DNA from: Bugula neritina
Taxonomy: Eukaryota; Animalia; Bryozoa
Assembly: GCA_964035545.1 (NCBI GenBank)
Contig: OZ037766.1
Location: forward strand, 12,204,722-12,268,721
Reading direction: 5' to 3'
DNA length: 64,000 nt
Below are positions 27,127 through 59,916 of this stretch, piece after piece. Below the pieces are notes generated by a model that saw nothing but the letters and a program-made list of their open reading frames with translations, was not told the DNA's origin and ran no database searches. The translations under genes were made by a program, and so were the position numbers. Position 1 is the stretch's first letter; every line of letters begins with the position of its first letter.

Positions 27127-28486
27127 CGGCGTAGTGTGATATAATCAACCACGCCCTTTAACCCTTTGCTCGAAGGTGACTTTACAAAAGAAAAGATAAC
27201 TCTACGTATGCAACTAAGGACAAGGTCAAAGTATGCGTATAGTCATCTCGCCTCTAGGAGATTGTTAATAATTATTATCATACATCAACTTTTAAACATA
27301 CAAGTGCATGTAATTAGCTTAAAATTAATGTAAGTGCTAAGTGTTTCGGAGATAGTAACTGTAAAGGCAATCACTATCTTATTCAACTTTTACGGTACAG
27401 AAGCAGTTGATAGTGTGAGTACCTAAGGCTGATTTTCCTCTCTTCCCAGGTTGAGGTTTTAATTTTACTTTTACTTTTACTTTTAGTTTTACTTTTCAAG
27501 TTTTTAAGTTTTTAGTTTTTATAGTTTTAATTTTTATTTTATATTATAACCATAAGATGATGATAATAATGTGGATATTCATTATCATTCTCATTTTTAA
27601 TTCATATTCATATTGACTTTGATATTCACATTCAGTGATTCACTCAATTTGATTTATTAATATTCAATTTCATGTTGATATTCATACTCATACTGATATT
27701 CAATCATATTGTATTAGTATTACTCTATTACTATAAGACTTAGTATTACTATTAGTAATGCTAAATATAATAGTAATACTAATAGTAATACTAGCCTAAT
27801 AGTAGTGCTAGTAGTACTAGTAACACTTACACCTATTACTGTGACCTATGTTTATACTTATAGTTATACTAATACTTTTAGTTTTAGTCAATTTACTAAT
27901 TTTGACTAACTAAGCGACTAAGACATGATTCATTTTATTTAATGATCATAATGATAATCATAATGGTAACCAGGTAATGAAGGTCATTATAATTTGTATT
28001 TCTATTAGGATTAGTATTACTATTAGTATTACTCTATTACTATTAATTTTATCATTGGTATTAATACTAACAGTACTAATTCAGTAAACATAATGCTAAT
28101 TGAATAATGTAGTATTACTATTACTATTAGTTATTTGTATTCACTGAGCAAGAATATCACAGTCACTATCATAGTCATAGTAACTGAGTAACTTAATGCT
28201 TGCTATCAGCTATGTACACTAGGTTGCTAGGTAGTCTATAGACTATCACACTTACAGGGAATATTGCTCCATCAACTTCTCTGCAATCCAGAGGTAGTAT
28301 AACGGAGTCATTTCAGATAGACGTTTCCCAGTTAGACGCTAGGCTTTCCACGGGGAGATATTTATTTATTTTAGTACGATATATGTATTTTGTTTGGGTT
28401 TTGGGAAAGGTCTAACTGGGAAGCGTCTATCTGTAAGTACATATTATAATTGACTTTGTGCTTCATTTGCTGTAAAATTAGCTGAA

Positions 28487-28933: not shown

Positions 28934-29191
28934 ATAATTAAATCTGTATTCAGTATTGACTATAACTCTAACTAAGAGTAAGAGTCAGAGTATCGCCATG
29001 ACTGATGCCAATGACATAGTTCAGTATGAATTAGCATTAGTATCAAATAGTAATACTAATTCATACTGAACTATACCTTACTAAACTATCACTAGGAGTA
29101 TAGTCATTGATTCTGACACTATGACTATGGGCTATAAGTGTAACATCAGTATAAGCATTAGTATTATCTATATTAATAGCCATATGCACAT

Positions 29192-29999
29192 GCGACACTG
29201 CCTTTGTTGCCCACTACCATCAGCAGGCTCAAGAAATCATCACCCGTTTTGCAAGATCTGCCAAAGACTTTGGACTAAAGATAAATATAACCAAAACAGA
29301 GATGATGTATCAACCACCACCAGGAGAACATGATGAGAGAGAAAAAATCAGTATAGATGGAGAAATCCTCAACAAAGTCAAGAACTTCAAATACCTTGGC
29401 TCAACCATCACAAACAACAACAAACTTGATCAAGAACTCCAATTGAGAATGTCAAAGCGTCACAAACTTTCGGAAGGCTACGAGAAAGGGTTTGGGATAA
29501 CGGAGACCTGACAACCAAGACGAAATGTGCAGTCTACCAAGCCATTGTTTTATCTACACTGCTATATGGAGTGGAGTCATGGACAGTCTATAAGATCACG
29601 GCACACAAGCTAAATACCTTTCTTATGAACCAACTAAGACAGATATTGTCAGTGAAATGGTGGCACTTTGTATCTAATATGAAGATCCTTCAGAAAACCA
29701 ACACTACCAGTCTATATGACACCCTCATCCAAAGAAATCTAAGATGGGCCGGACATATCAACAGATTAGACAACACCAGGATCCCAAAACAGGTTTTATA
29801 CTCACAACTAACAGAAGGCTCCCGTGACATCGGCAGACCGAGGCTCCGTTACAAAGATACCATTAAACGCAACCTTAAAGACAAGGGGATATCTCTCAGC
29901 AAATGGCAAAAGCTGTCACTTGACAGACTCAGATGGAGACAAATGATACACCAGAAGTCATAGTCGGACACGACAGACAGCAAGATGATAATGATGATG
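29192..29999 (+). mobile_element. 5'-truncated RTE-clade LINE (C-terminal RT region), one frameshift
   Basis: FGLKINITKTEMM...FKYLGS...LLYGVESW...LRWAGHINRLDNTRIPKQVLYSQL..G.R..GRPRLRYKD; (GAT)n tail; TSD atgcacat at 29184-29191 and 30000-30007. Confidence 0.92.
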
Positions 30000-30049
30000 A
30001 TGCACATTGTGCTCTTTAGTAATACTAAGAGTAGATGTCATCCTACATG

Positions 30050-30478
30050 GACTCTTCCCAGTTAGACGCTATTTATTTATTTTGGTACAATATATATTTT
30101 ATGTGCAATTTATTTGAATATCATTAAAATATATGTATATTTAAATAAACTTGGATCAATTGCTTGTTATTTAGCACATAAATAAATTCCTTTGGTCTGC
30201 ATAAACTTATTAATTTTGCATTTTCTATACTTCTTGCTGCTTGAAAAGATATTTGTTAATAAATATTCATTAAATATAATGTATATTATTAATGTTATTA
30301 CTGGTTTGTTGTCCCACATAAATCCGTTAAAGTTGGAATATTATTCCAGATAATTTATATTTACTATTATAGCTATTAGCATATTAGCTATTTAGCAATA
30401 AATCCAACAGTTATATAGGTATTTTACTATATATGATGGTACCAAAATAAAAAATAGCGTCTAACTGGGATGAAACCT
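30050..30478. mobile_element. Foldback MITE of the same family as 28487-28933
   Basis: tcccagttagacgctattt.tttattttggtac ... gtaccaaaataaaaaatagcgtctaactggga inverted repeat. Confidence 0.65.
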
Positions 30479-30655
30479 AAGAGTAAGCTTACTAGACACT
30501 AGTACTACTAATATTAGTATTGGTAATTTGACATTAGTACTAGTAAGTTAAGTATGAGTGCAGCTATAAGTGCAACATTAAGTTTATTTATAACTCTATA
30601 GTCTACGTAATAATTTTTGACTATTAGTATTTATTAAAGCTATACTCATAGTGCT

Positions 30656-31214
30656 TAAACAGCTACGGGACAGATTAGGCAAAGCAAGCGCGGCTTAGGA
30701 ACTCTGGAACAGATATGTATCCATCAGGGTAAAGTGTAAAGTCGACAGAGCGGTGGTGCTGGCAAGTCTGCTGTATGGAGAAGAAACAAAGATAATATAC
30801 AGGACACAGGTGAAGAAGCTAGATTTCATGATGAGGCAATTGAGAGACATAATGGCTGTAAAATGGTATGACAAAATAACGAATGAAGAAATACTAGAAC
30901 GTGCCAACTTGCCAAGCATGGCTCACATTCTTATAGAAAAGAACCTGCGATGGCTAGGCCGTGTGCACAGGATTAAAGATAGCCGGCCACCAAGACAATT
31001 GCTCTACTCTCAGCTGAAAGACGGCAAAAGAAATAGAGGGCGACCTATGCTCAGACTTAAAGATGTTGCTAAGAGGAATATGAAATGGAGATCAATCAAC
31101 TTGAGTTCCTGGCAGCAGACGGCTGACAACAGAGTTGCGTGGAGAGCTGCAACCAAATTCAATCGGAATCCAGGAAACAGTTATGGTCGTATCGACTGTC
31201 TGCAAGAGAAAGAG
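30656..31214 (+). mobile_element. Second 5'-truncated RTE-clade LINE (different subfamily)
   Basis: LLYGEET...LRWLGRVHRI..SRPPRQLLYSQL..GKRNRGRP.LR.KD; AG-rich tail; 12-bp TSD actcatagtgct at 30644-30655 and 31215-31226. Confidence 0.9.
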
Positions 31215-32234
31215 ACTCATAGTGCTGTACTAACAGGAATAGTACGGTTATAAATTAAACTTTAAATATAGTAGTAATGGGACTAGGATGTCTTAGGCCT
31301 AATTATTTGGGGCTAATCTATGTGACATATGTCACTTTAATCTATTTACTCTTTGTATTGTCTTTGATAGTTTATGGGCAATTTCACAATCAGCTGTTAT
31401 GTAATGTTATTATCATATTATGTTAATTTATGTTGACACTGGTCACTTTTGTTACTGGTGGTTATTTGGATGTGCAGCCAGTATTTGTACAGTTGTTGGG
31501 AGTTCCAGTAAATTGGTTATGACTATTTTAATATAGAGAAAGCTATTTAACTACAGCTATTATATTTATACATTACAGTAGGGGTTAGGCCTAGCTACTG
31601 AGCACCGGTGATCTGACATAGTAACTGTGAAAGGCTAGAATTCGATTATAAGCTAATAAATCTTAGTATTAGATTTGCTATGGCTCTGCCACTGTTGGTG
31701 TTACTAAAATTATCATTGTGATTGTAAGTTGCTCATAATGATCATTCTCATAAAAAATCAAATTAAACGCAGCTACTCAAAAAGGCAATTGCTATTGTCT
31801 ATCTATTACATAAATAGTTAATTGAAGTATCTGCAGTAGCCAGTGTTCGAAACACCTTGTTAAGGAATGTAGGTAGTAGGTACATAGATACACTTCACAT
31901 GCATTGTGCTATTATTTTTAGAATCTGTAATATTTTAAAGATAGCCTCGTGCTATTCAATACAGGGGAAAACTTAGGTTTATTTTGGAGCTTTATTGATC
32001 TGATTTAAACTTGCAAACCTTTACTATTTGACTATGTTCTTGAATTTGAAATAAATAGCTGTCCTAATTGTTAAATCGAAACCTGGCAACTGGTTATAGA
32101 CTTAGGGTTTTTTGAGAATTTTTTTCTTCTGTTTGGTTTACAACTTTTCTTAATAATTGCAGAAAAAATTCTTGGCAAAGCAAAAATGAGAAAGATTTGA
32201 CAGAAATGATCAAGGATTAGATGAGCTGAAGACC

Positions 32235-35200
32235 ATGGTATGATTTTGCATGACATTTGAGCATTAATATAAGTATATTATACTATAGTGAAGGGTAGGA
32301 AATTAAGAGGGCTAAGGACTTGGGTTCTATTTTGACAAAATGAACTAACAATTGTGATTGAATGTCTTCCCTAACAACACTGACCTTGTGTTTACTAAGC
32401 CAGTGTTACAGCCACTAAACCACAACTACGCCATGTAATAGTTTTAATTTTATTATGTTGCAGGTAAATACTTCTAAGCAAAAGGATGAAAGTGATCAAC
32501 ATAGTATATCCCACAAACATAAACTATCGATTGGTTCTATAAAACCTATAGGCAAAGGTGAAACAGACAAAATAATTATTTCTTTTGTAAATTACATTGT
32601 ATATGAAACACTTTAATTTGCGATATGAAGAGAAGAAGATTAATTAATTTTGTTCTTTCAATTTTTATTAGGAGATAACAAAACAAGCAGGAATAGCACT
32701 CAGAGTTCTTTTAAAGCAAAAGGTTACACCAAACTGTTACAGCTGGGCAGTCCTTCTAAATCATTGGACTCTAGTTATGGGAAATTAAAAATTCCAGACA
32801 TTGAAAAGCTCACCAAAGAGACTAAGATGAAAGGCAGTTCACCTATCTCTCAAATTTGTAAGCTGATTAGCAGATAATTTTTGTTTCAAAATTGCTATGA
32901 AATTTGATTGTTTCGAATTTTTAATATTTTGTACCTAATTATTTGTAGCCTTGTCACACTCAGATGTAAAAGTGATTCCTAAATTTGCAAATAAATGTGA
33001 AGCTATTCTGGATTCTTCAGTCAAAAGCCAGGTTGCAGTTAAGGCTACATCTAATAATGAACTGTGCAGTGATTCCACAGAGTCAATAACTTCAAAAGAG
33101 GATTCTGAAAAATCAGAGCCTGGAAATCATGACACTAAAGACGGTTCACCTTGCTCAAGTGCTCCTTTAAAGGCAATGAAAATGGCAACTGGAAAGCTGG
33201 ATTCTGCTAAATTTGTAAACAAATTTAGATCTGCATTCAAAAAGATTCAACCTGGCCAAATTATAGAAAAAGATAAGGTATCTAATACTGTGCCTGTGTC
33301 TGTGTGTAGCCAGGAGCTAATTCCTAAGGACAGTGCACCTGAACCACTTGAATTCGAAGCAGATATAAGGATTTCTAAAACTACAGAAGTAAGCTCTAAA
33401 AAGCGAAAGAAGGAGAAAAAAAGTGAGTTCGTACAATTTAAATTTTACTTATTTTTGTTCACAAAATCTTTTTTCTATTTGCTCTGCATTCAATATTAAA
33501 ACGTTGGTATGAGTTTTTACTTTCAAATTTTATTTTGTTCCAGAAAAGCGAAAGTTGCTTTGCAGTGAGGTGGACAGCGACAATTATGTACCTTCCAAAA
33601 AGTTGAAATCTTATAAATGTACTCTACCTCTGATAGAAACTGGGCATTCTACCAACCTACTGACATCTAGTCCAGAACTAAAAGTTCAACTGATCAATGT
33701 ATTGCATGACTCTGAAGTCGCATCAAATGGTTGCATCACACCTGACAATGAAGAAAGTAGGCCTTCAATGGCTCTGGAAAATTTACGTCCTAGCAACTGC
33801 AGTACTAGTGGTGATTCTATGATAACTATGGAGGGTCAGAAAACACAACCCAAAAGAATCAAGGGTCTTAAAAGAACTGCTAGAAAGACAATCAATAAAA
33901 ATCACAATCATGCTTCAGAAATGGCTCTGGTGAAAGATTTTGTTAATTCTCATAACATTACAGAAAACACCGACTCTATTTCAGCCTCTAGTGACATTCA
34001 TTCACACCAACACAATGCATCTCCACTTTCTAACAGCTCCCAGGTACCTCAAATCAGTAAAAATAACTTTTTTGGATCTCAGCAACATATAGAAAAAAAG
34101 AAAGAAGATCTTGTACTTGTCGATGAGCAAACAAAGTCATTGAGTAAATCTGCTCTGGCTTCTTCTACTGTGCTTGCTTTGGTTTCAACTGGTGCAGCTT
34201 CTGAAAATCTTGAAAGAACAAAAAGCTCCCAAAGTTCTGAGTCAAGTTTGCCGTATCAGAGTTTGTCTAGTACTGAGCTATCATCTATCACAAAACTTGA
34301 AAAACTTTCAACAGATGATAACCACATAAAGCTTGATGACCCTGTTGAAATGTCGAAAAATGTAGCTGCTCCCAATACCACAATATCTAAAGAAATTGAT
34401 GAAAGTTTGCTTAATGCAAGACCCCAAGTTAAAAAATCTAGCTCAAGCCTCTATCCAAAATCTGATGGTTCTGGAGATATAAACAAATCTGTGTTCGAGT
34501 CTGTTGACCTAGATAACATGTTGTCTGCGGCTGGCTATAAAGAGAGTCACTCCAATGCAGCCAATGGCATGGGTAACCCCTTCTCCAAAGATTCTCAAGA
34601 AGAAGTAAAGCCATCTGTGAATAAAGATTCAATAAAATGTCAAAATGTGGCAAAATGGACAACATCAATAACAGCTCATAAGTTGAACAGAAAGGATTGC
34701 AGTGTTGCTGGAAATTCTGCAGGTATACCTACTATGTTTATATTGAGCTTATTAAAAAACTTTTATTCTTTCAATATTTAGTGCAAGCTTAAAATTTCGA
34801 AATTTCAAATTTAATATAATTTAGTTTGAAATTTTAAATGTGGGCTGGTATTTACATTAAACTGGGGCATAGTTAATGTTTTTCCTAATATTGACTTTGC
34901 TACAAAAAAACTGTTTTTTTATTAAGTTGCTTTTAGTTCACTTTAAAAGAAAATACAATTTAGTATAATGAAAAACCATAGCCATATACCGTTTTTATAT
35001 TAGCTTCTCTGTACCTTGTGTACTTTTAAAATTCTAATAACTTTTTGTAAATTTTATTTTTGACCTCAACAACTTTGGTTTTAATTTATTTGAATGATTT
35101 TTTCAGATTAAACTACATAAACTATTTGAATGTAATAAGTATAATACATAGGTGACTAGCACCTAAGCATCTTTATTTAGGTGTAAAAAATAGCTAACAT

Positions 35201-38200
35201 AATTCATAAAAAACTTGCTGTCTTGCTATTCAATTACTTTGGTGGCTGTACTTGGCCTTTTGGAAAGTTTTGGCAGCAAATTAATTAGAAATATAGTTAG
35301 TATACTCACAAAGTTATGAGTATAAAATGCTCAATATTTTCTATTGTTTGAAACTTTGAAAATTATATCATGCTTTGACAAATTTAATAGTTTTTTCTTA
35401 CTAATTTTTTAAAAATAATTTTTTACTTTTTAAATAACTCAAAACAAAAACAGTCAGGGGTAAGAGCGATTGCCTAGTATACATGATGTTATTGGTTCGA
35501 GCTAACAAAGGCCATTGGTGATGGTAGACTGGCAGAACACCCAGTCATAATTGCTCCTGTGCCCCATCTGAATAAGCCCTCAGCCCGATTTAACAAAAAC
35601 CCTTTTTATCAGGGATTTTATCACAGGGATAGTGACTATGAGCTTACATGAGTTGTATAATTAATATAAGTAGCTACTGGGACTGCTCCATCAATTTGCT
35701 ATTCGCACTTTTTACATGCAAGTAACAACGTTGAAGGTTTAGAATTCTCATCAAGCCAATGCACATAAATTACTATCTCAACAATTGTATGGTACTAATT
35801 GGACTAATCTCACTATATAGTGAAGCTGTACATTGAAATCCAAGCAGTGTAGGAAAATATCTAGGTTGGATTATAAGCAATTTATTTTCAATTGTCTCTT
35901 GGGTAGTTGAGTGCCGAGATGCGTGTTTCTGCTTAGCTTCAGTTTACGAGTTTTTGGTTTGGTTTACAACTGCTAATGCTACAAATCTGTGCACAAACTA
36001 GAATATTTGTGGCTTTACTTTTGCCTCCTTATGGGGAAAATACTATGTTTTCTTAAACTTGGTCATGAATGCATTTTAATGTGCTAGTAGTATTTTAAAG
36101 GTTTATAGTTTTAGTCCTGTAGCCTACACTTTGTGGACTAAATTAATTTCGTATAACTGATATCAATTCGATAAATAATATATTATCTAATCAACATAAT
36201 GCAATGTGAATAACAACAACAACAATAGGCATAACCATTAACTTGAGTTATGCAAAGGCAGTTGAGTCAAATATTTCAGGCTACTAATAGATTCAACTGA
36301 TTGGTCTTAAATTTTTGTAGAGGAAAGTCACCAAAGAAAACCTAATTTGAGTACAGAGTCTCAAGTAAGTTTATTATATCATCCCTGGCTCAGCTGTTTT
36401 GCTATCTATTTGACAATATTATGCTTTTGAGTAAGACAGGAATAAATATTGGTTTATTATGATGAGCTTGGTGTAAAATTCATTATGAATAGTTCTAATT
36501 ATAATTAAAGGTTTAATTATAAGCCGTAAAATCAGTGGATACTAATTAATTAGGCTCATGTCATTATTTCTATTGTAATATTTACTAAATTGCACTATAG
36601 TTTTCTCAATCTAATTTTTAATTGTCAATCACAGCTTTATTTTTAACCCAGGAAAGTTTGTCATCAGAGCCAGGCTTAGTTATAGACACACAAGTCTTCT
36701 CTCCAGATGTTAGCTTAACCGAGCCGTTATTTTCCCCTGATGCCTATGAAGCTCCGCCTAGTGTGCAAGTTGTGGGCCCAATAATAGAGGCGCCCCCTAG
36801 TGTGCTGCCAGCGAGCGATACAGATGGCACTAGTGGTGTCAGCATTTCTACTACTTCTGTTAGCGAGGGCAAGGAGGGGACTGATGCAGCGTCCATTACA
36901 GATGATATTACCATCAATGATGAAAACTATATACCACATTCTAGTAATAAAGGTGTTGGTTTTTATAAGTTTTCTAATGGCGTAAAAGTGGTGACTGTCT
37001 ATAGAGATGGGGAGCTGTATTGCTCTGCACACCAAGTTGTTATTCGTCTAAAGTTGAGTTTAACTAATCTCAGTCAGTTGAAGTGCTCCAGTAAGGAGGC
37101 GTCACTTATTCGTATGATGGATAAATGTTTAAAGGAGAACTTCGATTCAAAGGTTGTTCCTCTCTCAGAAGTACAACATTTATTGAGTGCCCAAGAATCA
37201 ACTAGCAAAGCCTTGAAGGATAGCAGTGTACAACCAGTTTTCACGTCCAAGTCCTCTTGTAAACCACTTCCATCAGTATCCTCTACTCTCACCTCAGCTG
37301 ATGCTACAAGGACTTTACTCAGCAGCTCAGTGACTCCCAAGTCACAGCTGATTCATGGTGTCGACAATTCCCTTAATTTATCTCCTCTTCAGACATCAAC
37401 ACCCAAAGCAGATTATGTAGATTTGTGTACAGCAGATACCATCGCTCCTGTGTGTACAGAACAGCAATACTACGCAACTCAAGTGATACCATTTCAAATG
37501 GCATCTGTTTCTTATACTTCATCTATTATTCACCCTGTAACTCAGCCGGGGAAAGACACTTCTAATGATGGGGCCAACAGTAACGCTGCTCTACGGAAGG
37601 GTCTAAGTTCAGACACTACAGCTGATCAGTCTACTACCAGGAGTGTTCGTGCTGCAGAACCAAGCTCGTCATCTCGGGGTATGGTATTTTCTGTTATGCA
37701 AATCTAGTTTTACAATCACAGTTTTTTTTTATCGGAATCTGTGGCCTCTTTATTTTCCCTTAGGTTAGTTATCATGTATACTTTTGAGATTGTGAGAACT
37801 CTAGCAATATAAGATCATTAAATTTTTTTATGAAAAACAACTGTTAGATTACTTTAGCTTTGTTTCTAGTTAACCAAGCATTACCCCACCCCACCCTTTC
37901 TAACATTGAGGCGGAATCACTGCTGGCAAATAAAGAAACTGCTCAAATAGAATGTCAGGAAATAGAGGAGGAGAGTCACTTTTCTGGTTACCAAAAGACT
38001 GAAAGGATCTTGGAGACTATTCAGCCCTCGCCTACTATTGCCGTGCAGCATACCAAGAAGTTGCTAAGTGATAACCAGGTCTACACAGGAAAGCTGTTTG
38101 CTCGTACCTCGGTGAGCTTTTACCTCATTTACAATTATCATGTTTATCGTGAGTTGAATATTTAGCATTCCATATTGTTTCATGTAATAATAGATTTTTC

Positions 38201-48539: not shown

Positions 48540-49700
48540 GGGTGTGAGAGTATATAATGTGGGCGTGAGAGTATATAATGTGGGTGTGAGAGTATATAAT
48601 GTGGTTGTGAGAGTATATAATGTGGGTGTGAGAGTATATAATGTGGTTGTGAGAGTATATAATGTGGGTGTGAGAGTATATAATGTGGTTGTGAGAGTAT
48701 ATAATGTGGTTGTGAGAGTATATAATGTGGGTGTGAGAGTATATAATGTAGGTGTGAGAGTATATAGTGTGAGTGTGAGAGTATATAATGTGGGTGTGAG
48801 AGTATATGATGTGGGTGTGAGAGTATATGATGTGGGTGTGAGAGTATATAATGTGAGTGTGAGAGTATATAATGTGGGTGTGAGAGTATATAGTGTGGTT
48901 GTGAGAGTATATAATGTGAGTGTGAGAGTATATAATGTGGTTGTGAGAGTATATAATGTGGGTGTGGGAGTATATAGTATAGGTGTGAGAGTATATAATG
49001 TGAGTGTGAGAGTATATAATGTGGGTGTGAGAGTATATGATGTGGGTGTGAGAGTATATAATGTGGTTGTGAGAGTATATAATGTGGTTGTGAGAGTATA
49101 TAATGTGGGTGTGAGAGTATATAATGTGGGTGTGAGAGTATATAATGTGAGTGTGAGAGTATATAATGTGGGTGTGAGAGTATATAATGTGGGTGTGAGA
49201 GTATATAATGTGTTTGTGAGAGTATATAATGTGGGTGTGAGAGTATATAATGTGAGTGTGAGAGTATATAATGTGGGTGTGAGAGTATATAATGTGGGTG
49301 TGAGAGTATATAATGTGGTTGTGAGAGTATATAATGTGGTTGTGAGAGTATATAATGTGGTTGTGAGAGTATATAATGTGGTTGTGAGAGTATATAATGT
49401 GGTTGTGAGAGTATATAATGTGGGTGTGAGAGTATATAATGTGGTTGTGAGAGTATATAATGTGGGTGTGAGAGTATATAATGTGGTTGTGAGAGTATAT
49501 AATGTGGGTGTGAGAGTATATAATGTGAGTGTGAGAGTATATAATGTGAGTGTGAGAGTATATAATGTGGGTGTGAGAGTATAGAATGTGAGTGTGAGAG
49601 TATATAATGTGAGTGTGAGAGTATATATAATGTGGGTGTGAGAGTATATAATGTGGTTGTGAGAGTATATAGTATAGGTGTGAGAGTATATAGTATAGGT
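48540..49700. repeat. 21-bp minisatellite (gtgagagtatataatgtgggt), about 55 copies
   Basis: Direct; explains the three long repetitive ORFs here. Confidence 0.97.
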
Positions 49701-49960
49701 GTAGGAGCAAGTGATGCAATAAGGTTATGAGAGGTAGTAATTGCCATAGGAGAATGCATGAATAGTGACTAGGAGAGCAAATAATAGAGGATTGAGGGTA
49801 ATAATTATCTGAGACTGAATAATGAAGGTATGAGAGCAAATTATATATCTATGAGAGCGTTTTGTGAGCATATTATGAGGAAAAATATAGCTATTAGATA
49901 TTATATTGTAAGCATAGGAGATAAAATAATGAGTGAATTTTTGACCATTTAGCTCTCCAT

Positions 49961-50253
49961 GATTTTAAGTAAAAATGGCACAGGTAAAAATGGCACGGTA
50001 AAAATGGCACGGATAATAAAGGTACAAATGAAAAAGTATTGGAAAAATTGGCACACTGATGTTAAAATTTCCCAAACCCCAAATCCCACACCAAACCCTA
50101 ATATTGAAAATATGTCATTTTTATCTATAACTTTTCTATTTGTGCCTTTATTACCGGTGCCACTTTTACCTGCGCCATTTTTACTGGTGCCACTTTTACC
50201 TGTGCCATTTTTTACCTGCGCCATTTTTACTGGTGCCACTTTTACAGGACACC
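49961..50253 (-). mobile_element. Foldback element with tandem AAAAATGGCAC subterminal repeats
   Basis: AAAAATGGCAC repeats on the left, GTGCCATTTTT repeats on the right, ends GATTTTAAGT... and ...GGACACC; second copy in opposite orientation at 55803-56108. Confidence 0.7.
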
Positions 50254-50532
50254 AGCCTTTCCTAGTGCATTGTATTATATAATGTGTTTAAGAAACATGA
50301 TATATGACAAAATTTTATTGGTTGAATTTTAAGAATGAAAATTTAATAATATATCTTTTTGTAAGAGCAACTATCTTTGAACTTATTCATTATTATTTTG
50401 GAAAAGCGCTGAGCACGGTCTTTAAAATCTTTACAGTCAGAATTAATGGCTAAAAACAGTACATCATTTAAATTAGGCTAATTTTTTGTCAATTATAAGT
50501 GAAATCAAAAAATGTAATGTTTTGTAAATGCA

Positions 50533-53155
50533 TCACCAACGAATACATACAAATTCGCAATACTGTTGTCCTGAAACTGTGTGACATTCAAAGACCATTT
50601 CGAGACAAAGTGTATACCCCCGCTTGACTCTGCTATTTGAAGCTGAAGTAACTTTTGTATCTGAAATTAAAAACAAGTATGTTAACTAAAATCCATTTGG
50701 ATTCAGCACTAATTGAAATAACAAGATGTTAAATTATTTAAAATAGTAGCCAATATTATTTGTGCAAATGGACAGGCCAGGGCGGGCCCTGATGCTGAAA
50801 AATACCCAGCATTACCAAAAAGATGAAAAATACTAAAACGTTTTTTCTTGTTACAAATGTGTTGGAGTTTTTATCTAAATTTTACAATACAGTACTCCCC
50901 CTGTATCTCGCTAAGCTTTGGGTCCTGAAACCTCAATTTGCGACATAGTAGAATACCGGATTTAACTCACGGATCCAGTAAATTTGGCCATTTTGTCCCT
51001 AAACACACATACATGAGCCACAAAACCGAAGTCAAAACCATTCTTGTTACTTATGAAATTTTGTGAAAACTTGATCCGTGAGATATGGAGGGAACACTGT
51101 ATATTATAAAAGTGAGATATGGAGGTAACACTGTATTTAAAAGTGAGATATGGAAGGAACACTGTATATAAAAGCTGTAACTACAAGCAAGATAGTTACC
51201 AGAATCTCCTGTTGGTATCACAATCATCCATTTATACCCATTGGTGCACTCATTCTGCACACGTTTAGGAAGGAAACTGACATCTTGCACGAACTCATCG
51301 AGTACTTTAACATCTACTTCTGCGTCTTCCTCCTCTATTTCCTGGTCACCAAAGTTGTCCAGGAACTCCGACACCACATTTTCATTGTTGGCTTCATTGA
51401 ATGTAACAGGACTAATATAGCAGATGCCTTTATCAGCTCTGATTACACGGAGACCCTAAATAATTTGTATATGCATAGATTTCACACAGAGCACTACTGT
51501 TCATCATATACATATATGCTATATATAGTAAAACTACACAACTCTATACAGTCATACGTCCCCATGCTTCGCATTAAGCAAATGGATGTTTTATTCCATG
51601 CATGGAACAGTGTCAATTGAATGACCCCGCAACCACACATGCCAATGCAAAATTTCATTTCATGTGGGAGCTTATTGTAGGTGAAGTGAATATATTACTA
51701 CATTGAATCAAATAAATTTGCAAAAACTTAAAAAGATATTAAAACTAAAAAAATATGTTTACAAAATATCTGCATAATATACAGGTGCATAAACAGGTAC
51801 ACAACAATTTAGTAATCTTGCCTCTTTCATTTATAAGTGAATAGCACTCAGAAATATTTTAACCTTAGTACATGATATAGACGCTATAACAGACACATAT
51901 CTACTAACACTGTGCACTATATGTACTATATAATAGGCAAGATCTCATACTATTCAACATATATATGAGCTGCATCAACCACTATTTACCTTTTGAAACA
52001 AATCAGCATGAAAAGTACCATCAGCTCGGTGGTAGTATGCCACATGTTCATCTTTGTTCAGCATAACCTGATCCTTCACCTATATTGTACACAAAGTCTT
52101 GTTAACCATTAGCCTCATTTCTAATATTTTTATTATACATAAACTTTTAAAAACAACATTGCTATAAATTCACGTAATTAAAATCCAATACTCTTGCATT
52201 TTATCAACATTATATCTGATTTTATTTATTGCTTCATTTCTATTTTCAACTTTTTTTAAAATTCAAGATTCTTTTTAAATTTATTGTTTCTATCTTTACA
52301 CTCAACACCTCCAGCAGTGACTACTGTTGTGTAGGCAAATAGTACTGTGACTTGCTGTTTATTGGTATACAAAACCTGGTCAAATACATTATAGTAAATT
52401 ATTCGTAGTTTTTTATATAAAAAATTAAATTTATAAAATACTACAACACTATTTTAAAAGTTGTAAAAATTTGATGTTTTCAACATCTCTCTGGTTTCAT
52501 ATCACAGAACCAGCAACTTTTATGATAGATAGTTATAGTGTTCCTTTAAGTTCTTACACAGCTCAATGGGGATGTATCAGCATAAGTTGAAATAATTCAA
52601 AGAAGAATTTTAGGTTGAGAAAAAATTTATCCGGGATAACAAATACATAAGAGTTGATAATATTTTAAACTCTTTACTCACATGTTGGTTGTCAGGAGTT
52701 CTAATGTTAACAGTTGCCTGGACATCTGCACTCACTCTGGTCGTCTTCTCAGGTTCTTTCTGCTGGCAAACTGCATGAGTTTTAGTCAGGCCCATGTAGA
52801 TAACGGCTGACACAGAAACAACCAACAGAATGGAGATAACCAGCAAGGAGACTCCCAGGAGCTTTGACTTGTCGCTTTTCTCAACCATCTGTGAACACAC
52901 AATTGAATGAATTTCCAATGTACATAATAATTTAACCTAATTATAAGTTGCTATGTTTTAAAAATCCCAATAATAATTTGACTCAAACAATTCAGCTTGA
53001 AAAAACTTTGCTAAAATTTAAAAGATATTGCCAATAAGTTATTGAAAATTTTATTTGATGGTTCTCAAGTTATAAAGTTGATATAAATGTAAGAGAAAGC
53101 TTGCCTTAACGTCTTCGAATGTCTGTTTGTCCGAGAAGTTCATATTAATCTTCAT
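50533..53155 (-). CDS. Type II membrane BRICHOS-domain precursor, copy A (243 aa), releasing an anionic 28-aa four-Cys peptide
   Basis: Exons 53155-53105 (GC donor), 52888-52682 (TM LLGVSLLVISILLVVSVSAVIYMGL), 52079-51990, 51455-51200, 50660-50533 (TGA); 732 nt in frame. BRICHOS-like motifs FQKGLRVIRADKGICYI and FLPKRVQNECTNGYKWM; furin site RVKR. Confidence 0.85.
50890..51164. mobile_element. Tc1/mariner (Tigger-like) MITE in intron 4 of copy A, right end triplicated
   Basis: TA|CAGTACTCCCCCTGTATCTCGC ... GTGAGATATGGAGGGAACACTG|TA (50890-51099); the terminal ~32 bp recurs twice more to 51164. Confidence 0.7.
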
Positions 53156-53171
53156 TCTATGAGTTGAGATT

Positions 53172-53207
53172 GAATGATTTCAGCTGAAATCGCTGCAGCC
53201 TTTTATA
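53172..53207 (-). promoter_or_regulatory. TATA box plus Initiator of BRICHOS copy A
   Basis: TATAAAA (53207-53201) followed about 30 nt later by TCATTC, then ATG at 53155; same layout in copy B. Confidence 0.75.
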
Positions 53208-54039
53208 CCAGCCTGTCTCCCATAGAGTTACTGTTTTGCAATAATTATGTTGACCAGTTGCCAAAAAGAAACACGTCTTAAAACATCAAATAGAGTGCAT
53301 TGCCAAATTAACAAAGATTTTGATTGGCCATAACCTAAGTTGCAAGACATTCAAAACTGAAATAAAATACATTTTCCCACAATAACTTTAATGTCTGTAG
53401 CCCTCCACAAGTATTTATGATCTCCAAATTAGAACTACTTGTTATATTTGTGAATGAAATTTGAGTTAAGTCAAGTTAAGTTAAGTTAAGCAAAAAATAA
53501 AGAGTCCCTAAAAAATTCATGCCTGTATTAAATTATTCATATTTATATGGGCCATGAAATAAACACACTTCAGGGTAGTATTCCCAAACATATTGGTTAA
53601 AAAAAGCTCTGCTGAGATGGCATTGTTTGTTAGACTCAGTGTTCTAGGCAAAAAAATGTTCTTGCTGATATGACATTACATTGTTTGTTAGACTCATTGC
53701 TCTAGGCACTATATAATTATATTGTCATTGCATGCTATTCTTAGCTGTTGCAACACCCAGGCAGGTTAATCACCGAGCTAGCCTAAAAGTTTAGACTTTG
53801 AACCTAAAACAGTCTGTAGATGCTAGCAAATATATACACGAATGTTCTTTGAGATTTCAAAAATGAAGGGTGTCAGAGAGTGTTTAAACAGAATGACAGT
53901 AGAGTAAAGTGTGACTTACAGTTGAATAGACATATGAGTGATTGTTGATGTCATAATCGGAGCATGATATGACAGTATAGTTGAACAAATAGTATTCTTT
54001 CCTCACAAATTCATAAGTTATGGCTATTGACCTTGCTTA

Positions 54040-55200
54040 CTGCATGGCATTTCCCAGGAAGAATACTGTTGCTATCAGTGTGCTGTGTATCGGGTACACC
54101 AATTCAAATGGCATGTGAATTTTGAAATTAATTCGCATACCTCTTCCAGTTGCAATTGTCTGTTTTGACTATCTGGCATCACATTTTCTTGTTTGGATAA
54201 AAAGTTGCAGCATACACTAATGGGTCAATAACCTGTTTATAGCTTTTCTTCTTTGGCACGTTTGGTTGTGAATTGGAGAGTTATATCTTCACAATCAGTT
54301 GCCATCCAAGACCTCTGCAGGAATTTTCCACGGTAAAAAATAGATGTGGAATGGTTAGGTAATACGTCAAGTACTCTTCTTTCACAATTACAAAGCTTTC
54401 AAAAGTTATAAAAAAAGTCACTAGGAGGGTGAAGCAACATATTTCAAGTAGAAGGTATTGCATAAACTAGCAAATTCCTGACTGGAAAATGTGGGTAATG
54501 ACCTGTAAGAAAAGTTGCACATACAGCCTCAATAGTACAGATGTCCTCCAATACTTGCATTGTTTGCTATTAATTATTTGCCTAATATCCTGTAAATCAT
54601 GAGAAATTTGAACAATTAATACGGAAAAGCTACATCTTACTCCTGAAGAGTCAAAGGAAATCTACATGTGCGAGTTTCAATTGTAGGATTATGGATCTGC
54701 TGTGATGGTGTTATGACACACGGCTTTCGGTACAGATGAAAATAATGCTTTGGAGTAGCTGTCAAATGAATGTACAGGTGAACAGCTGCGGGGACTTAGA
54801 ATTCGAGCTGGTACTGCATCAATAGAGAAATTGAGAAAAGTCTGTGTTCTAGATTAAGAATTTAGCAAAATAAGTTAGATTTTTGCAAGAATTTCAACTC
54901 GAGCCCCAAATCAAAATTTAATAATAAAATTAAAGAACTTAGGCGGTCTCAATTTCTCCACTACTGCTTCTAAGTGCAGAATTCTAGTTTGTATCTGTTA
55001 AGTTAGGCTAATACTACAGCAAGAAATTGGATGCTTTTAAACTCCTGGCAAACTTTATAAGATTTTCTGGCCAGCTCAATATGGGATTTCTTCTTGATCA
55101 ATCACTATGACAGCACAACTCCTACTCCATAAAATGAACTATTGTGTTTAGTTATAGTGTGCTAGGCTAGCGGCATTGATGATGCTGTTCTATAGCTAGG
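54040..55200 (+). mobile_element. Possible heavily decayed LINE remnant
   Basis: Scattered fragments resembling RT-downstream motifs (VKY, DWK, DYGSAV) in several frames with stops; weak. Confidence 0.25.
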
Positions 55201-55802
55201 TAAAAGTTTGTCCAAATTTTTCTGACTTTGTAAACAAAATATCACTCGTGAGGAAGTTATACAGCAGATCGCAGTTTCATCTGCAGAATTGGAGACGACA
55301 CACCAACATATTGGAGATGATGGGATCATAGCAGACACACCAACATTGGTAATGAAACAACCATTGCAACAATGGAAGTCTAGGATTCTGGGTAGTTTAA
55401 AGAGAGTCGCCAGAAAAGAATTTGTTGGCCATTTCCGACTCCTAATTGTTAATGGTATGACCCAAATGTTCAACAGTGTTTAAAAAAGTTACATATGTCT
55501 AATTGTATTTGAAAACTATGCTTCTGAAGTGCTGCAATTAAATTTGGGAGATAAGTTGGTGTTATTGTTCTGTTCGGTCCACTAGTCCACTGTATTCCGT
55601 TATACAGCAACTCCTGGAAATTTCTAAGGTCAAGGTGTTCATGCAGGCTGTTAAAGCTGAGGTGAGCTATGGGAAACTCCAAAAGCACATTTAGTTAATA
55701 ATATTCAAATAAAGCATACTGATCATGCACTATATAGCTGTCTCGTGTCGTATTTTAGGCTCAAATTGTAAGCAAACATTTGTGAAGTAGAACTTGGTGC
55801 AG

Positions 55803-56108
55803 GGTGTCCAAATGGCACAGGTAAAGATGGCACAAACGGAAAGGTGGGTAAAAGTGGCCCATTTTGAATATTGGGGTTTGAGGTGGAGGCTTGGGGATTT
55901 AGGGTGGAGGGTTTATAGGTTTGGAGTTTGAGGAGTTGAAAAAATTTAACATTAGCATGCCATATTTACCTACTTTTCCGTTTGTGCCATTGTTACGTGT
56001 GCCATTGTTACCCGTGCCATTATTACCTGTGCCATTTTCACTGGGCCATTTTTACCTGTGCAATGTTTACTTGTGCCATGTTTACCCGTGCCATTTATAC
56101 CTAAAATT
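55803..56108 (+). mobile_element. Foldback element, same family as 49961-50253
   Basis: GGTGTCC start, AAATGGCAC repeats, GTGCCATT repeats, ...ACCTAAAATT end. Confidence 0.7.
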
Positions 56109-57470
56109 GAGTGTAGAGTTGACCTTCTCTAAGCCAGCTCAATATTTTTTGCAGAGTAGATGCTGCGTAGTAACATAGCATAACATTTATAGTAGACTGT
56201 AATAACAAAAGAACAACATTAATGCAGTTAAGTATTAATCATGATTGAGTTAATAATTTATGTATGTGTAGCTCGAAAGATTATAGTTAAACTGGTGAAA
56301 AGTTTAATATATTATTATAAATTGCATAATAACTTTTTGCAGACAATTTATCACATTTACAGGCACAAAAAATCTGTTAGCAAAAAAGTAACAGAGTCAG
56401 TTAATTTGTGTTGCTTTCTAGTTATCTAGTTTTTTATAACCAATTTTATTTTTTATATTGTTTTGCTAGTTATTTCATAGTTATATAATAATATTGTACA
56501 AGTAGTAATCATGTGTTCTTCGTTAGTTGAACTTGTTTAGTTAATCTGAAGTAGTTACTTATTAGTTATTGCTGTTACATTTTTCCAAAATATATTTAAT
56601 TAAGAACTGGTATCAAAGGGGTTATTGTTCAGTGGGAACATTCGATGTGGCCAGATAAGTTATGTAGTAACAAAGTGTGACAATTTCAATCCTTTGCATG
56701 GCTGTGTTAGGCAAAATAGATAAATACTCTAAAATGTTGTTTAAATTACTATTATAGTGCTTTAAGCCATTCACTGCATAGCCCTAGAGTAGAAAAATAG
56801 TAGAGGTAGGGTAAGAATGGCACCACCTCATTTATATTCAGATAGCCACATACCCAATAGTTAACACAAGGTATATAAACCAAAACAGCCACAACTTATA
56901 ATCTAACAATTCCACTTCATCATAAATAAGGATATTCTATGAGTAAATGTGACAGTTAAAGTATGCAGGTGAATGTTGCTGGGCATGATGTGTAAACCAG
57001 TTTATTAATTATAAGTTTATACTTGGGATCTCAGGTTCAAAATCCCAAATGCTATTTTATAGCTAATGCAGTATATTTATGAATTCATAAAGGCCATCAG
57101 GTTAGAAAAAAGTAATTTTATTAGAAACTTTTAAAAGGAAAATTTGAAATTTTTTGATTACTTTAATGGATTATATCAAAGATGCCATTATTTATGGTTA
57201 TCTTTTGAAAGCTTTATTGCTAAATAAAATGCATAAAAATGGTACAGTCAACATAAGGCTAAATTTTAACCAATAAGCAAAACAGGAAAATATTATAATG
57301 CTTTGTAACTCACAAGTTTATTCTCAATAGATAAAGCACACTATATCAAAGCTGAAGTTCAAAATAGAAAAATTTTAATTATAATTTTATAGCTTGCCAT
57401 ACTTTTAAACACAAATCATAAATTTATATGAACTCTTAGCAGCCTTAAGCAATATTAAAAGACTTTTGGC

Positions 57471-59864
57471 TTATCCTCTAATAGTACATATACGACGTAC
57501 ATAACAATAAGCTCTCCTGAAAATGATGTAGCAGTAGTAGCGATTGTAGCAACTGACTCGGCGTTTAACTCTTCCATGGGTAGCTGAAGTAACAGCTGCA
57601 TCTGGAATAAAAAGGCAATCTCATTGAAAAAAAATGTCTACATTCAACAGTAATTATATTAAAAAACAAATAGAAAAATACAAGTTATTATACTAAAAAG
57701 TCAAAAGGAACTAAAACTTTCAACCTCGCTGCAAACAATAGGCTTGACTTTTGGTGAACTGTAACAGGTGAACTAAACAAGATAGTTACCAGAATCTCTT
57801 GTTGGCATCACAATCATCCATTTATACCCATTGGTGCACTCATTCTGCACACGTTTAGGAAGGAAACTGACATCCTGCACGAACTCATCGAGTACTTTAA
57901 CATCTACTTCTGCGTCTTCCTCATCCAGTTCCTGGTCATCGAAGTTGTCCAGGAACTCCGACACCACATCTTCATTGTTGGTTTCATTGAAAGCAACAGG
58001 ACTAATATAGCAGATGCCTTTATCAGCTCTGATTACACGGAGACCCTAAACAGGTTGTATGCATAAATTTCACAGAACCATGCATACATAGCCGACCATA
58101 TAAATATATATAACATATAGTGAAACTACAATACTTTGCATGGTCATATTATGCCACAATTCCAAACCGACTTGCATACATATGCTCAAAAAGATTTTAA
58201 AACAAAAAACTATGCATTGACATAATCTAAGCAAACATAAGCACATATAGCCTATTATATATAGAATTTATATATGTGTAAAAATTTACGTACGATGCAA
58301 GCTTTTATTTTATTTAGAGAATAGCACTAGCTACTTTCACTCAGAAAGAGTCGTACATGATATACACACTGTAGCTGACACATATCTACTAACACTTTGC
58401 ACTATGTGCACTATATAATAGGCAAGATATTGCATACTATTCAACATATGTATGAGCTGTATCAACTGCCATTTACCTTTTGAAACAATTCAGCATGAAA
58501 AGTACCATCAGCTCGGTGGTAATATGCCACATGTTCATCTTTGTTCAGCATAACTTGATCCTTCACCTATATTATACACAAAGTTTTTTAAACCATTAGC
58601 CCTGTTTCTAATATTTTCATTATATATGAAAATTTTAGTAGCAACCTCCCGCAGAATACATGTATAATTAAAATAGAAAACCAAAATTTTTACATTTCTG
58701 TACCAATATTATGCCTGATTTCATGGATTGTGGAACTTTAATTTTCAACTAAATATTTACTAACTGTTTTCTTTTGGCAATATTAATTTAAATGATTGCT
58801 ACAAATCTTATACTCAAAGCCTGTAACATCAATCTTATAGTATGTGTACCAACAGCCATACTGGCAACTTATATATAGATATACAGAATTTTTGCTAAAT
58901 ATTTACAGCAAATCACTCAAATCTTTATGCAAGAAAACGAATATAAAACACTGCAATATCATTTCAAAAGTTAAAAAAGTGTAATATCTTAAAACATGTG
59001 TGTGGTTGCATATTACAAAACAAATAACTTAATCATGAAAAATAGTTATACTGGCATGAGTTGAAATACTCTTAGTTCAGCTATATTGTATAATGAAATT
59101 AGACTTCAAGTTGTATAGGATAATGTAAGCTGAACGATTTTTTGGTGCTTTTAACTTGCCAAAATATTTTAGTTAGCAAATGGACATGATCATATACATG
59201 TTTTACTTACAGCTGCATGTGGATGTACTGGCACTAGTTGAAATAATTCAAATAAAAACTTTAGGTTGAAAAATAATGTGCTGCAAACAATGTTTATATA
59301 GCATTTTCAATTTACCAAAATAGCTTATTTGCTAGATAACAATTGCACAAGAGTTGATAATATTTTAAACTCTTTACTCACATGTTGGTTGTCTGGAGTT
59401 CTAATGTTAACAGTTGCTTGGACATCTGCACTCACACTGGCAGTCTTCTCAGGTTCTTTCTGCTGGCAAACTGCATGAGTTTTAGTCAGGCCCATGTAGA
59501 TAACAGCTGACACAGAAACAACCAACAGAATGGAGATAACCAGCAAGGAGACTCCAAGCAGCTTTGACTTGTCGCTTTTCTCAACCATCTGTGAACACAA
59601 AATTTAATGAATTTCTAATCTACATAACAATTTAACCTCATTATAAGTTGCTATGTTTTATAAATCACAATAATAATTTAACTCAAATAATTCAGCTTGA
59701 AAAAACTTTGCTATAAAATTATTACTTTGTTTAAATTAGTAATTAAAATTAATTGGTAATAATTAAATAAAAATTTTATTTGATGATTCTTTAATTATAA
59801 AAATAAAGCTTGCCTTAACGTCTTCGAATGTCTGTTTGTCTGACGAGTTCATACTAATCTTCAT
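57471..59864 (-). CDS. Type II membrane BRICHOS-domain precursor, copy B (244 aa), releasing a cationic 29-aa four-Cys beta-hairpin candidate antimicrobial peptide
   Basis: Exons 59864-59814 (GC donor), 59588-59382, 58566-58477, 58045-57790, 57601-57471 (TAA); 735 nt in frame; exons 1-4 same sizes as copy A; last exon DAAVTSATHGRVKR-RVSCYNRYYCYIIFRRAYCYVRRICTIRG*. Confidence 0.88.
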
Positions 59865-59880
59865 TCTATGAGCTCAGATT

Positions 59881-59916
59881 GAATGATTTTAACCAAAATA
59901 ACTGCAGCTTTTTATA
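59881..59916 (-). promoter_or_regulatory. TATA box plus Initiator of BRICHOS copy B
   Basis: TATAAAA (59916-59910), TCATTC about 30 nt downstream, ATG at 59864. Confidence 0.75.

What the first reader, a model, noticed from the sequence alone, without database searches (positions are those of the whole stretch)
50533..59916. Tandem BRICHOS precursor pair: one conserved chaperone carrier, two very different beta-hairpin cargo peptides
Seen: two head-to-tail five-exon genes with the same exon 1-4 sizes (51/207/90/256 nt), TATA+Inr promoters, cytosolic tail, TM helix, BRICHOS-like domain with both Cys, an acidic patch, RVKR and a C-terminal four-Cys peptide. The peptide exons are absent from the ORF track. 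Established: TM + BRICHOS + furin site + beta-hairpin peptide is the architecture of polychaete BRICHOS antimicrobial peptides (arenicin, alvinellacin, capitellacin, nicomicin), and more distantly of ITM2B/Bri2. Inference: a diversifying innate-immune peptide cassette. BRICHOS-AMPs are mainly described from annelids, so if the host is not an annelid this would extend the system to another lineage.
Basis: partly seen in the sequence, partly recalled or inferred. Interest (0 to 1): 0.92.

Follow-up and report, generated by a model that had tools for sequence, protein, structure and literature searches.

The report
Bryozoan BRICHOS peptide-precursor gene pair
Two neighbouring genes of the moss animal Bugula neritina encode nearly identical chaperone 'carrier' proteins that would each release a very different small peptide, one positively and one negatively charged; they resemble the antibiotic-peptide genes so far described only in marine worms, but their activity is untested.

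Summary
Two intact five-exon genes lie on the minus strand (244 and 243 aa, GC-AG first intron). The first 201 residues are 93.5% identical; the four-Cys peptides after RVKR differ completely (+7 and -2). The host is the bryozoan Bugula neritina (tzBugNeri2.1, chromosome 2). An independent draft annotation of close relatives uses the same splice junctions. The carrier has a BRICHOS fold (structure and language-model matches) but scores below the Pfam cut-off and has Leu at the conserved Asp. The pair is part of a five-copy cluster and a family of about 14 loci whose cargoes include disulfide hairpins, Cys-free beta strands and Pro/Arg-rich peptides; relatives occur in Watersipora. Carriers are under purifying selection and look homogenised, while cargoes change faster and flip charge. 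BRICHOS antimicrobial peptides are published only from annelids, so this extends the design to another phylum. Only cargo A looks like a classic cationic hairpin. UniProt already auto-labels draft orthologues as BRICHOS, and this scan noted the family on other DNA of this genome. New variant of a known kind.

The parts
59909..59916 (-). Gene A TATA box; initiator-like TCATTC at 59886-59881
   Evidence: 32-nt TATA-to-Inr spacing kept in four intact copies (consensus match only)
59814..59864 (-). Gene A exon 1 (51 nt, cytosolic tail), followed by a GC donor
   Evidence: same junction in draft model P0071
59382..59588 (-). Gene A exon 2 (207 nt): signal-anchor TM helix, an unpaired juxtamembrane Cys58, linker strand
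   Evidence: 45% identical to Watersipora P0006
58477..58566 (-). [quoted passage not shown]
57790..58045 (-). Gene A exon 4 (256 nt): BRICHOS core with Cys128 and Cys186, acidic helix and loop
   Evidence: PF04089 at 17 bits, E 0.007, below the cut-off of 25; profile search
57471..57601 (-). Gene A exon 5: spacer, RVKR (57572-57561), cargo A (57560-57474; 29 aa, net +7, C-x5-C-x8-C-x5-C, C-terminal Gly)
   Evidence: identical cargo in copy D
57317..57322 (-). Candidate polyadenylation signal of gene A
   Evidence: motif only
53200..53207 (-). Gene B TATA box; initiator-like TCATTC at 53177-53172
53105..53155 (-). Gene B exon 1 (51 nt), followed by a GC donor
52682..52888 (-). Gene B exon 2 (207 nt): TM helix and linker
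51990..52079 (-). Gene B exon 3 (90 nt); Leu at the conserved-Asp position
51200..51455 (-). Gene B exon 4 (256 nt): BRICHOS core with both Cys
   Evidence: PF04089 at 16.5 bits
50533..50660 (-). Gene B exon 5: spacer, RVKR (50631-50620), cargo B (50619-50536; 28 aa, net -2, C-x6-C-x8-C-x3-C)
   Evidence: syntenic orthologue with the same Cys pattern and charge in the draft assembly
50314..50319 (-). Candidate polyadenylation signal of gene B
   Evidence: motif only

Best explanation
Each gene encodes a type II membrane pro-protein. A divergent BRICHOS domain holds the beta-prone C-terminal peptide in the secretory pathway. A furin-like convertase cuts after RVKR and releases a 28-29-residue, two-disulfide peptide; cargo A is probably amidated through its terminal Gly. 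The peptides are most likely host-defence or microbiome-shaping effectors: A is a classic cationic membrane-active hairpin, and B is an anionic hairpin with another target or another mode of action. The cluster evolves by tandem and inverted duplication, with recombination that keeps the carrier exons alike while older, faster-changing cargo ends persist. SHOWN here: gene structure, host, fold of a close relative, purifying selection on the carrier, faster change of the cargo, mosaic identity between copies. INFERRED from Bri2, furin and annelid BRICHOS-AMP biology: chaperoning, cleavage, disulfide pairing, amidation and antimicrobial activity.
For: Intact frames and splice sites. Same splice in transcript-hinted AUGUSTUS models of a Virginia colony and the same architecture in Watersipora RefSeq proteins. 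An intronless relative runs from TM to cargo in one frame (L046). BRICHOS fold: a homologue model at pLDDT 88 matches ITM2/OAF/BRICHOS clusters at TM 0.70-0.75 against 0.55 for the next unrelated family. The Atlas model and features of draft protein P0071 (93.6% identical to A over residues 1-202) point to BRICHOS. Carrier A/B dN 0.03, dS 0.11. Between the two assemblies, cargo pN is 0.137 against carrier 0.031 (Fisher p=4e-6) and non-coding 0.074 (p=0.02), with all four Cys kept and charge flips. Cargo A has a perfect C4:C25, C10:C19 register, +7 charge and seven aromatic residues, like arenicin and alvinellacin (PMC6780910, Table 4). Other paralogues carry Arg/Ile-alternating and Pro/Arg-rich peptides.
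Against: No activity, peptidomic or read evidence for these two genes. Cargoes B and E are net anionic, and Watersipora cargoes range from 0 to -13, unlike the cationic BRICHOS-AMPs. Pooled cargo pN/pS is 0.70, not above 1, and B's cargo pS is also raised, so older alleles or conversion can explain the excess. The conserved Asp is replaced by Leu. Matches to solved structures are weak (2yad E 0.084; VIA Z 4.2-4.4, below LolA-like folds at 5.7). No named annelid precursor was reached by the profile search.
Confidence: 0.6

Rival explanations
1. The cargoes are structural, self-assembling peptides (functional amyloid for cuticle, adhesive or calcified wall), and BRICHOS stops premature assembly until cleavage.
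For: All cargoes are beta-prone. Many are acidic and aromatic, or strictly alternating Cys-free strands. Preventing amyloid is the established BRICHOS role (PMC9714404).
Against: Rapid amino-acid turnover, charge flips between orthologues, and birth-and-death of copies fit conflict-driven genes better than structural ones. No skeletal-proteome paper naming BRICHOS came up.
Confidence: 0.17
2. The peptides act on animals rather than microbes: deterring grazers or settling larvae, competing for space, or serving as polymorphic recognition or signalling ligands between colonies.
For: Two-disulfide hairpins are common ligand scaffolds (own knowledge). Hypervariability and charge flips suit specificity-driven ligands. 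A sessile colonial host faces fouling and neighbours.
Against: The only functionally tested invertebrate BRICHOS cargoes are antimicrobial (PMC6780910, PMC10745061). Cargo A has every sequence mark of a cationic AMP.
Confidence: 0.13
3. Only A is an effector. B is either a charge-complementary partner that tempers or co-assembles with A, or a relaxed copy on its way to decay, like the broken copy C.
For: Opposite charges in adjacent genes. B's cysteines are 3 residues out of register. A broken copy lies next door.
Against: B's carrier is under purifying selection. The syntenic orthologue keeps all four Cys and the -2 charge despite 10 of 28 changes. A paralogue with the B scaffold is itself cationic.
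Confidence: 0.06
4. The five-exon models are wrong or the genes are silent: exon 4 does not splice to the RVKR exon, or the GC donor is unused.
For: No reads could be laid. Intron 1 has a non-canonical donor.
Against: Independent annotation gives the same junctions. The phase-1 intron before a dibasic-site exon recurs across the family. dN/dS is 0.27.
Confidence: 0.04

Closest known systems
Annelid BRICHOS-AMP precursors (arenicin, alvinellacin, capitellacin, nicomicin, abarenicin, HfBRI series)
   Same: About 240-aa precursor: hydrophobic N-terminal segment, acidic pro-region with BRICHOS, dibasic convertase site, short C-terminal disulfide peptide. Heteromastus has TM-anchored forms and nine cargo families on one carrier type (PMC10745061). 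Tandem multigene family with intergenic recombination, as in Alvinella (PMC5431198).
   Different: Host is a bryozoan; the family is published as polychaete-only (PMC6780910), later also from echiurans. Several cargoes are anionic. Cys spacing is longer (inner x8, outer x5). The pattern is the reverse of Alvinella, where the AMP is monomorphic and BRICHOS diversifies. No sequence-level link to annelid precursors was detected. Activity is untested.
ITM2B/Bri2 (and OAF) type II BRICHOS proproteins
   Same: Cytosolic tail, signal-anchor, linker and a BRICHOS domain with the Bri2-type extra strands (against PMC9714404); furin site; short beta-prone C-terminal peptide. Best structural matches at TM 0.72-0.75.
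   Different: Multi-copy and hypervariable rather than conserved. Four-Cys cargo. Conserved Asp replaced by Leu. Below the Pfam cut-off.
Unstudied database entries: B. neritina EB796_015196 (A0A7J7JLJ2) and EB796_014395 (A0A7J7JMN9); Watersipora subatra XP_067942708.1, XP_067947259.1 and relatives
   Same: Same family. EB796_014395 is the B-type gene (90% identical, same length without exon 1), and EB796_015196 is the E-type gene.
   Different: Automatic labels only ('BRICHOS domain-containing' or 'uncharacterized'). No paper linking BRICHOS to bryozoans was found. Cargo A was not seen in the draft loci I could fetch.

Membership tests
BRICHOS proprotein superfamily | Cytosolic tail, TM or signal segment, linker, BRICHOS domain, beta-prone C-terminal region | tested here: met
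   (cargo beta propensity 1.23 and 1.14)
BRICHOS proprotein superfamily | BRICHOS fold (antiparallel sheet, two helices, final strand) | tested here: met
   Tested on relatives, not on the window's own spliced protein. Watersipora domain model at pLDDT 88, Atlas TM 0.70-0.75. Atlas model of draft protein P0071 TM 0.55-0.56. PDB matches are weak.
BRICHOS proprotein superfamily | Two conserved Cys (strand 4 and helix 2) | tested here: met
   Cys128 and Cys186; invariant columns in alignment A3
BRICHOS proprotein superfamily | Conserved Asp (97% Asp, 2.7% Asn, 0.3% Glu/Ser in single domains; PMC9627735) | tested here: not met
   Anchored on the F-x-K-G motif, Watersipora and the distant paralogues have Asp, whereas all five cluster copies have Leu. 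The position was assigned by alignment and the model's strand order, not by direct alignment to Bri2.
BRICHOS proprotein superfamily | Pfam PF04089 at or above the gathering score (25 bits) | tested here: not met
   Exon 4: 17 and 16.5 bits. Full-length draft proteins: 13-14 bits. Still the commonest hit across the family, 8 of 24 members.
BRICHOS proprotein superfamily | Convertase site before the C-terminal peptide, and actual cleavage | tested here: inconclusive
   R-x-K-R is present in all five copies. Cleavage itself cannot be tested.
BRICHOS proprotein superfamily | Chaperone (anti-aggregation) activity | not testable with these tools
   needs recombinant domain
Annelid BRICHOS-AMP family | Polychaete or other annelid host | tested here: not met
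   Host is Bugula neritina
Annelid BRICHOS-AMP family | Acidic pro-region containing BRICHOS | tested here: met
   net -14 (A) and -11 (B)
Annelid BRICHOS-AMP family | Cationic mature peptide | tested here: inconclusive
   Met by A (+7), not met by B (-2)
Annelid BRICHOS-AMP family | Beta-hairpin closed by one or two disulfides | tested here: inconclusive
   A has an exact nested register; B's outer pair is 3 residues off. No peptide structure was predicted or solved.
Annelid BRICHOS-AMP family | Antimicrobial activity | not testable with these tools
   needs synthetic peptides
Annelid BRICHOS-AMP family | Common descent with annelid precursors within BRICHOS | tested here: inconclusive
   The named hits of the profile and word searches are all bryozoan; only some hits were looked up, and no annelid sequence was available for a tree

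The most novel reading that the evidence does not exclude
Cheilostome bryozoans run their own modular peptide-secretion system. A homogenised, Asp-less BRICHOS carrier is reused for old, exchangeable cargo exons whose charge flips repeatedly on the same disulfide scaffold. Cationic and anionic hairpins together shape the colony's surface microbiome, possibly including tolerance of the bryostatin-making symbiont. This would be the first gene-encoded antimicrobial peptide family of the phylum and would include a new anionic hairpin class.
Probability: 0.2. Interest if true: 0.8.

Novelty: new variant of a known kind. Interest (0 to 1): 0.6.

Why it matters
BRICHOS-guided mining is the most productive recent route to new hairpin antibiotics, but it has been confined to annelids and relies on an HMM that misses these proteins. 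A bryozoan family with about 14 loci in one genome gives ready-to-synthesise candidates from a phylum for which I found no described peptide antibiotics. It also offers a natural test of two open points: whether one BRICHOS surface can chaperone cargoes of opposite charge, and whether the near-invariant Asp is dispensable. B. neritina is a model for a defensive symbiosis, so host peptides that select bacteria would be directly testable there.

Tried and rejected
I did not resend or trim the request, and read laying could not be used without run ids, so there is no direct read evidence. As the operators asked, the spliced models were never sent to a search tool: searches went exon by exon by reference, and splicing was done only inside scripts to check the frame and to compare with proteins the tools returned. 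PF04089 on the whole genome rang nowhere, controls included, so it is uninformative. A full-length fold with 5 sequences was poor (pLDDT 52) and its searches were inconclusive. The PDB sequence search found nothing. LolA and ependymin-like VIA hits (Z 5.0-5.7) were rejected as generic sheet similarity. The metagenome scan found no second copy of cargo A. Exon shuffling from an unrelated source was rejected: the start of exon 5 is about 70% identical between A and B, so the cargo exons share an ancestor. 'Divergence starts exactly at the furin site' was rejected in its strict form, because intron 4 and the 3' flank are already unalignable. Clean positive selection was not shown (pN/pS 0.70). 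No paper was found for a Bri2-like dimer role of Cys58, so that idea was dropped. A human or contaminant origin was rejected (chromosome-scale bryozoan scaffold).
Full report
Observation. The two genes are real and lie on the minus strand. Gene A has exons at 59864-59814, 59588-59382, 58566-58477, 58045-57790 and 57601-57471 (244 aa). Gene B has exons at 53155-53105, 52888-52682, 52079-51990, 51455-51200 and 50660-50533 (243 aa). Exons 1-4 are 51/207/90/256 nt as reported. Intron 1 has a GC donor in both genes; all other sites are GT-AG. A TATA box sits 32 nt before an initiator-like TCATTC in all four intact cluster copies. The first 201 residues are 93.5% identical: a tail, a hydrophobic helix from residue 29, a linker with one unpaired Cys, and a domain with Cys128 and Cys186. 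After RVKR, cargo A is 29 aa, net +7, spaced C-x5-C-x8-C-x5-C and ends in Gly. Cargo B is 28 aa, net -2, spaced C-x6-C-x8-C-x3-C. A pairs exactly as a nested hairpin with a two-residue turn; B's outer cysteines are three residues out of register.

Host. The window is C2:12204722-12268721 of a 216,009,554-base assembly in 321 pieces. The contigs fetched measure 33.58, 32.42, 16.05 and 10.88 Mb. These match chromosomes 2, 3, 6 and 9 of Bugula neritina tzBugNeri2.1, which has 216.00 Mb in 320 scaffolds plus the mitochondrion (PMC11480708). The host is a cheilostome bryozoan, not an annelid.

Are the models right? Indirect support is good. A second assembly, from a Virginia colony annotated by AUGUSTUS with transcript hints (PMC7576161), holds EB796_015196 (243 aa, all five exons, GC donor used) and EB796_014395 (226 aa, exons 2-5, 90% identical to B). 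UniProt auto-labels both as BRICHOS domain-containing. Watersipora subatra RefSeq proteins of about 250 aa have the same layout. An intronless contig from an unnamed organism runs from TM helix to cargo in one frame, as a spliced transcript would (L046).

Is it BRICHOS? By sequence only weakly: PF04089 gives 17 bits on exon 4 and 13-14 bits on full-length draft proteins, against a cut-off of 25. It is still the only family that recurs widely across relatives, 8 of 24. By structure, yes. An AlphaFold model of the Watersipora luminal domain (pLDDT 88, pTM 0.82) shows the strand and helix order described for Bri2, with the extra strands (PMC9714404). It matches ITM2, OAF and other BRICHOS clusters at TM 0.70-0.75 over 124-129 of 133 residues, against 0.55 for the next families. 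ProSP-C BRICHOS is the top Foldseek hit but is not significant (E 0.084), and VIA-align is inconclusive. The Atlas features and own model of the draft protein P0071, 93.6% identical to A over residues 1-202, also point to BRICHOS. One hallmark fails: where Watersipora and the distant paralogues have the Asp before F-x-K-G, all five cluster copies have Leu. In a survey of single BRICHOS domains that position held only Asp, Asn, Glu or Ser (PMC9627735). I assigned the position by alignment among relatives, not directly to Bri2.

The family. Three more copies lie just past the window. C is broken: start codon lost, exon 2 acceptor lost, and a 13-nt deletion in exon 4. D is inverted and carries a cargo identical to A. 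E carries a third, Tyr-rich cargo (-1). All keep an inner C-x8-C loop. About nine further loci lie on chromosomes 2, 3, 6 and 9. Those examined keep a cargo exon after exon 4 but carry Cys-free alternating beta strands, two alternative cargo exons in one gene, or long Arg/Phe- or Pro/Arg-rich peptides. Watersipora cargoes have four Cys and net charge 0 to -13; unnamed marine contigs add cationic four- and six-Cys cargoes. In a tree of exon 4 the cluster is one well-supported clade (99/100). It groups, with moderate support, with one Watersipora subfamily and apart from the Cys-free paralogues. Every hit that carried a name was bryozoan.

Evolution. The A/B carrier has dN 0.03 and dS 0.11, so both are under purifying selection. 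Exon 5 is only 58% identical at the DNA level, though its first 41 nt are about 70% identical, so the cargo exons share an ancestor. Intron 4 and the 3' flank cannot be aligned between A and B. The 3' module therefore looks older than the carrier divergence, which points to homogenisation of exons 1-4 or to recombinant gene birth. Mosaicism supports this: A and D are 80% alike in intron 1 and 91% in exon 2, but 98-99% in exons 3-5. Between the two assemblies (non-coding distance 0.074), cargo pN is 0.137 against 0.031 in the carrier (p=4e-6) and exceeds the non-coding rate (p=0.02), with all cysteines kept. E changes from -1 to +2, and the draft has a cationic paralogue on the B scaffold. Pooled pN/pS is 0.70 and B's cargo pS is also high, so diversifying selection is suggested, not proven. 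This is the reverse of Alvinella, where the peptide is monomorphic and BRICHOS varies (PMC5431198).

Mechanism. Most likely (0.6), the precursor enters the secretory pathway as a type II membrane protein, BRICHOS shields the beta-prone cargo, a furin-like protease cuts after RVKR, and the released disulfide peptides act in defence or in shaping the microbiome. These steps are inferred from Bri2 and annelid BRICHOS-AMPs; none was tested. A fits a cationic membrane-active hairpin. B does not, and must act otherwise, if it is antimicrobial at all. Rivals are structural self-assembling peptides (0.17), ligands or deterrents aimed at animals (0.13), B as a partner of A or a decaying copy (0.06), and wrong or silent models (0.04).

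Comparison and novelty. It works like the annelid BRICHOS-AMP precursors, and one carrier with many cargoes is already known from Heteromastus (PMC10745061). I do not file it in that family: the host, the charge of B and the untested activity do not meet the definition (PMC6780910). I file it as a divergent BRICHOS-fold proprotein with two noted departures, the Pfam score and the Asp. BRICHOS proteins as such are known from 11 phyla (PMC10182729). A search for BRICHOS with bryozoa found only one review in which the two words merely both occur. What is new is the bryozoan radiation, the anionic and charge-flipping cargoes, the Asp-less carrier and the constant-carrier, variable-cargo pattern. 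Other first readers of this scan noted the same family elsewhere in this genome; I had located those loci before looking, and their notes are not independent evidence. Verdict: new variant of a known kind, interest 0.6.

Noticed in passing
G000:C2:12268750-12288410 (L007-L009), just past the window end: Three more cluster copies: broken C, inverted D with cargo identical to A, and E with a Tyr-rich cargo. Window 54200-57300 is about 90% identical to DNA between D and E.
   Followed up: yes
L012:5771-8630 (G000:C2:29.41 Mb): Distant paralogue with two alternative Cys-free cargo exons in tandem; both are kept in two JGI contigs (L038, L039). A broken inverted copy lies about 8 kb away.
   Followed up: partly
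G000:C6:10.969-11.016 Mb and G000:C3:22.516-22.523 Mb: Four paralogues with long Arg/Phe- or Pro/Arg-rich cargoes ending in a shared short hydrophobic strand, and two paralogues with strictly alternating Ile-rich cationic 16-mers.
   Followed up: partly
G000:C9:7.900 Mb (L028): Paralogue with a frameshift in exon 4 and an Arg/Ile-alternating cargo exon.
   Followed up: no
L051:7231-7353 (draft assembly GCA_010799875.2): A B-scaffold cargo that is cationic and is absent from the window's assembly, showing copy-number and charge variation between colonies.
   Followed up: partly
window 1-6200, + strand: Calponin-repeat protein gene (PF00402, E 7e-19) with an open frame of over 1200 aa built from a 234-bp unit in 15.7 copies at 97% identity.
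   Followed up: partly
window 48540-49733: 21-bp minisatellite, about 55 copies, strongly G-skewed, which produces spurious long ORFs.
   Followed up: no
window 49960-50245 and 55800-56100: Related elements built of 14-15-bp repeats in both orientations flank gene B and recur between D and E; possibly a non-autonomous transposon that aids unequal recombination.
   Followed up: no
window 29155-31250: Open frames that look by eye like decayed non-LTR retrotransposon reverse-transcriptase tails; palindromes at 27712-27822 and 29016-29074.
   Followed up: no
P0037 (Watersipora XP_067947260.1): A 481-aa model with two carrier-plus-cargo units, either a fused prediction of tandem genes or a true double precursor.
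   Followed up: no
window 33513-34778, 36622-37704, 11425-12777: Long Ser/Pro-rich open frames without Pfam hits, probably large exons of a neighbouring gene.
   Followed up: partly
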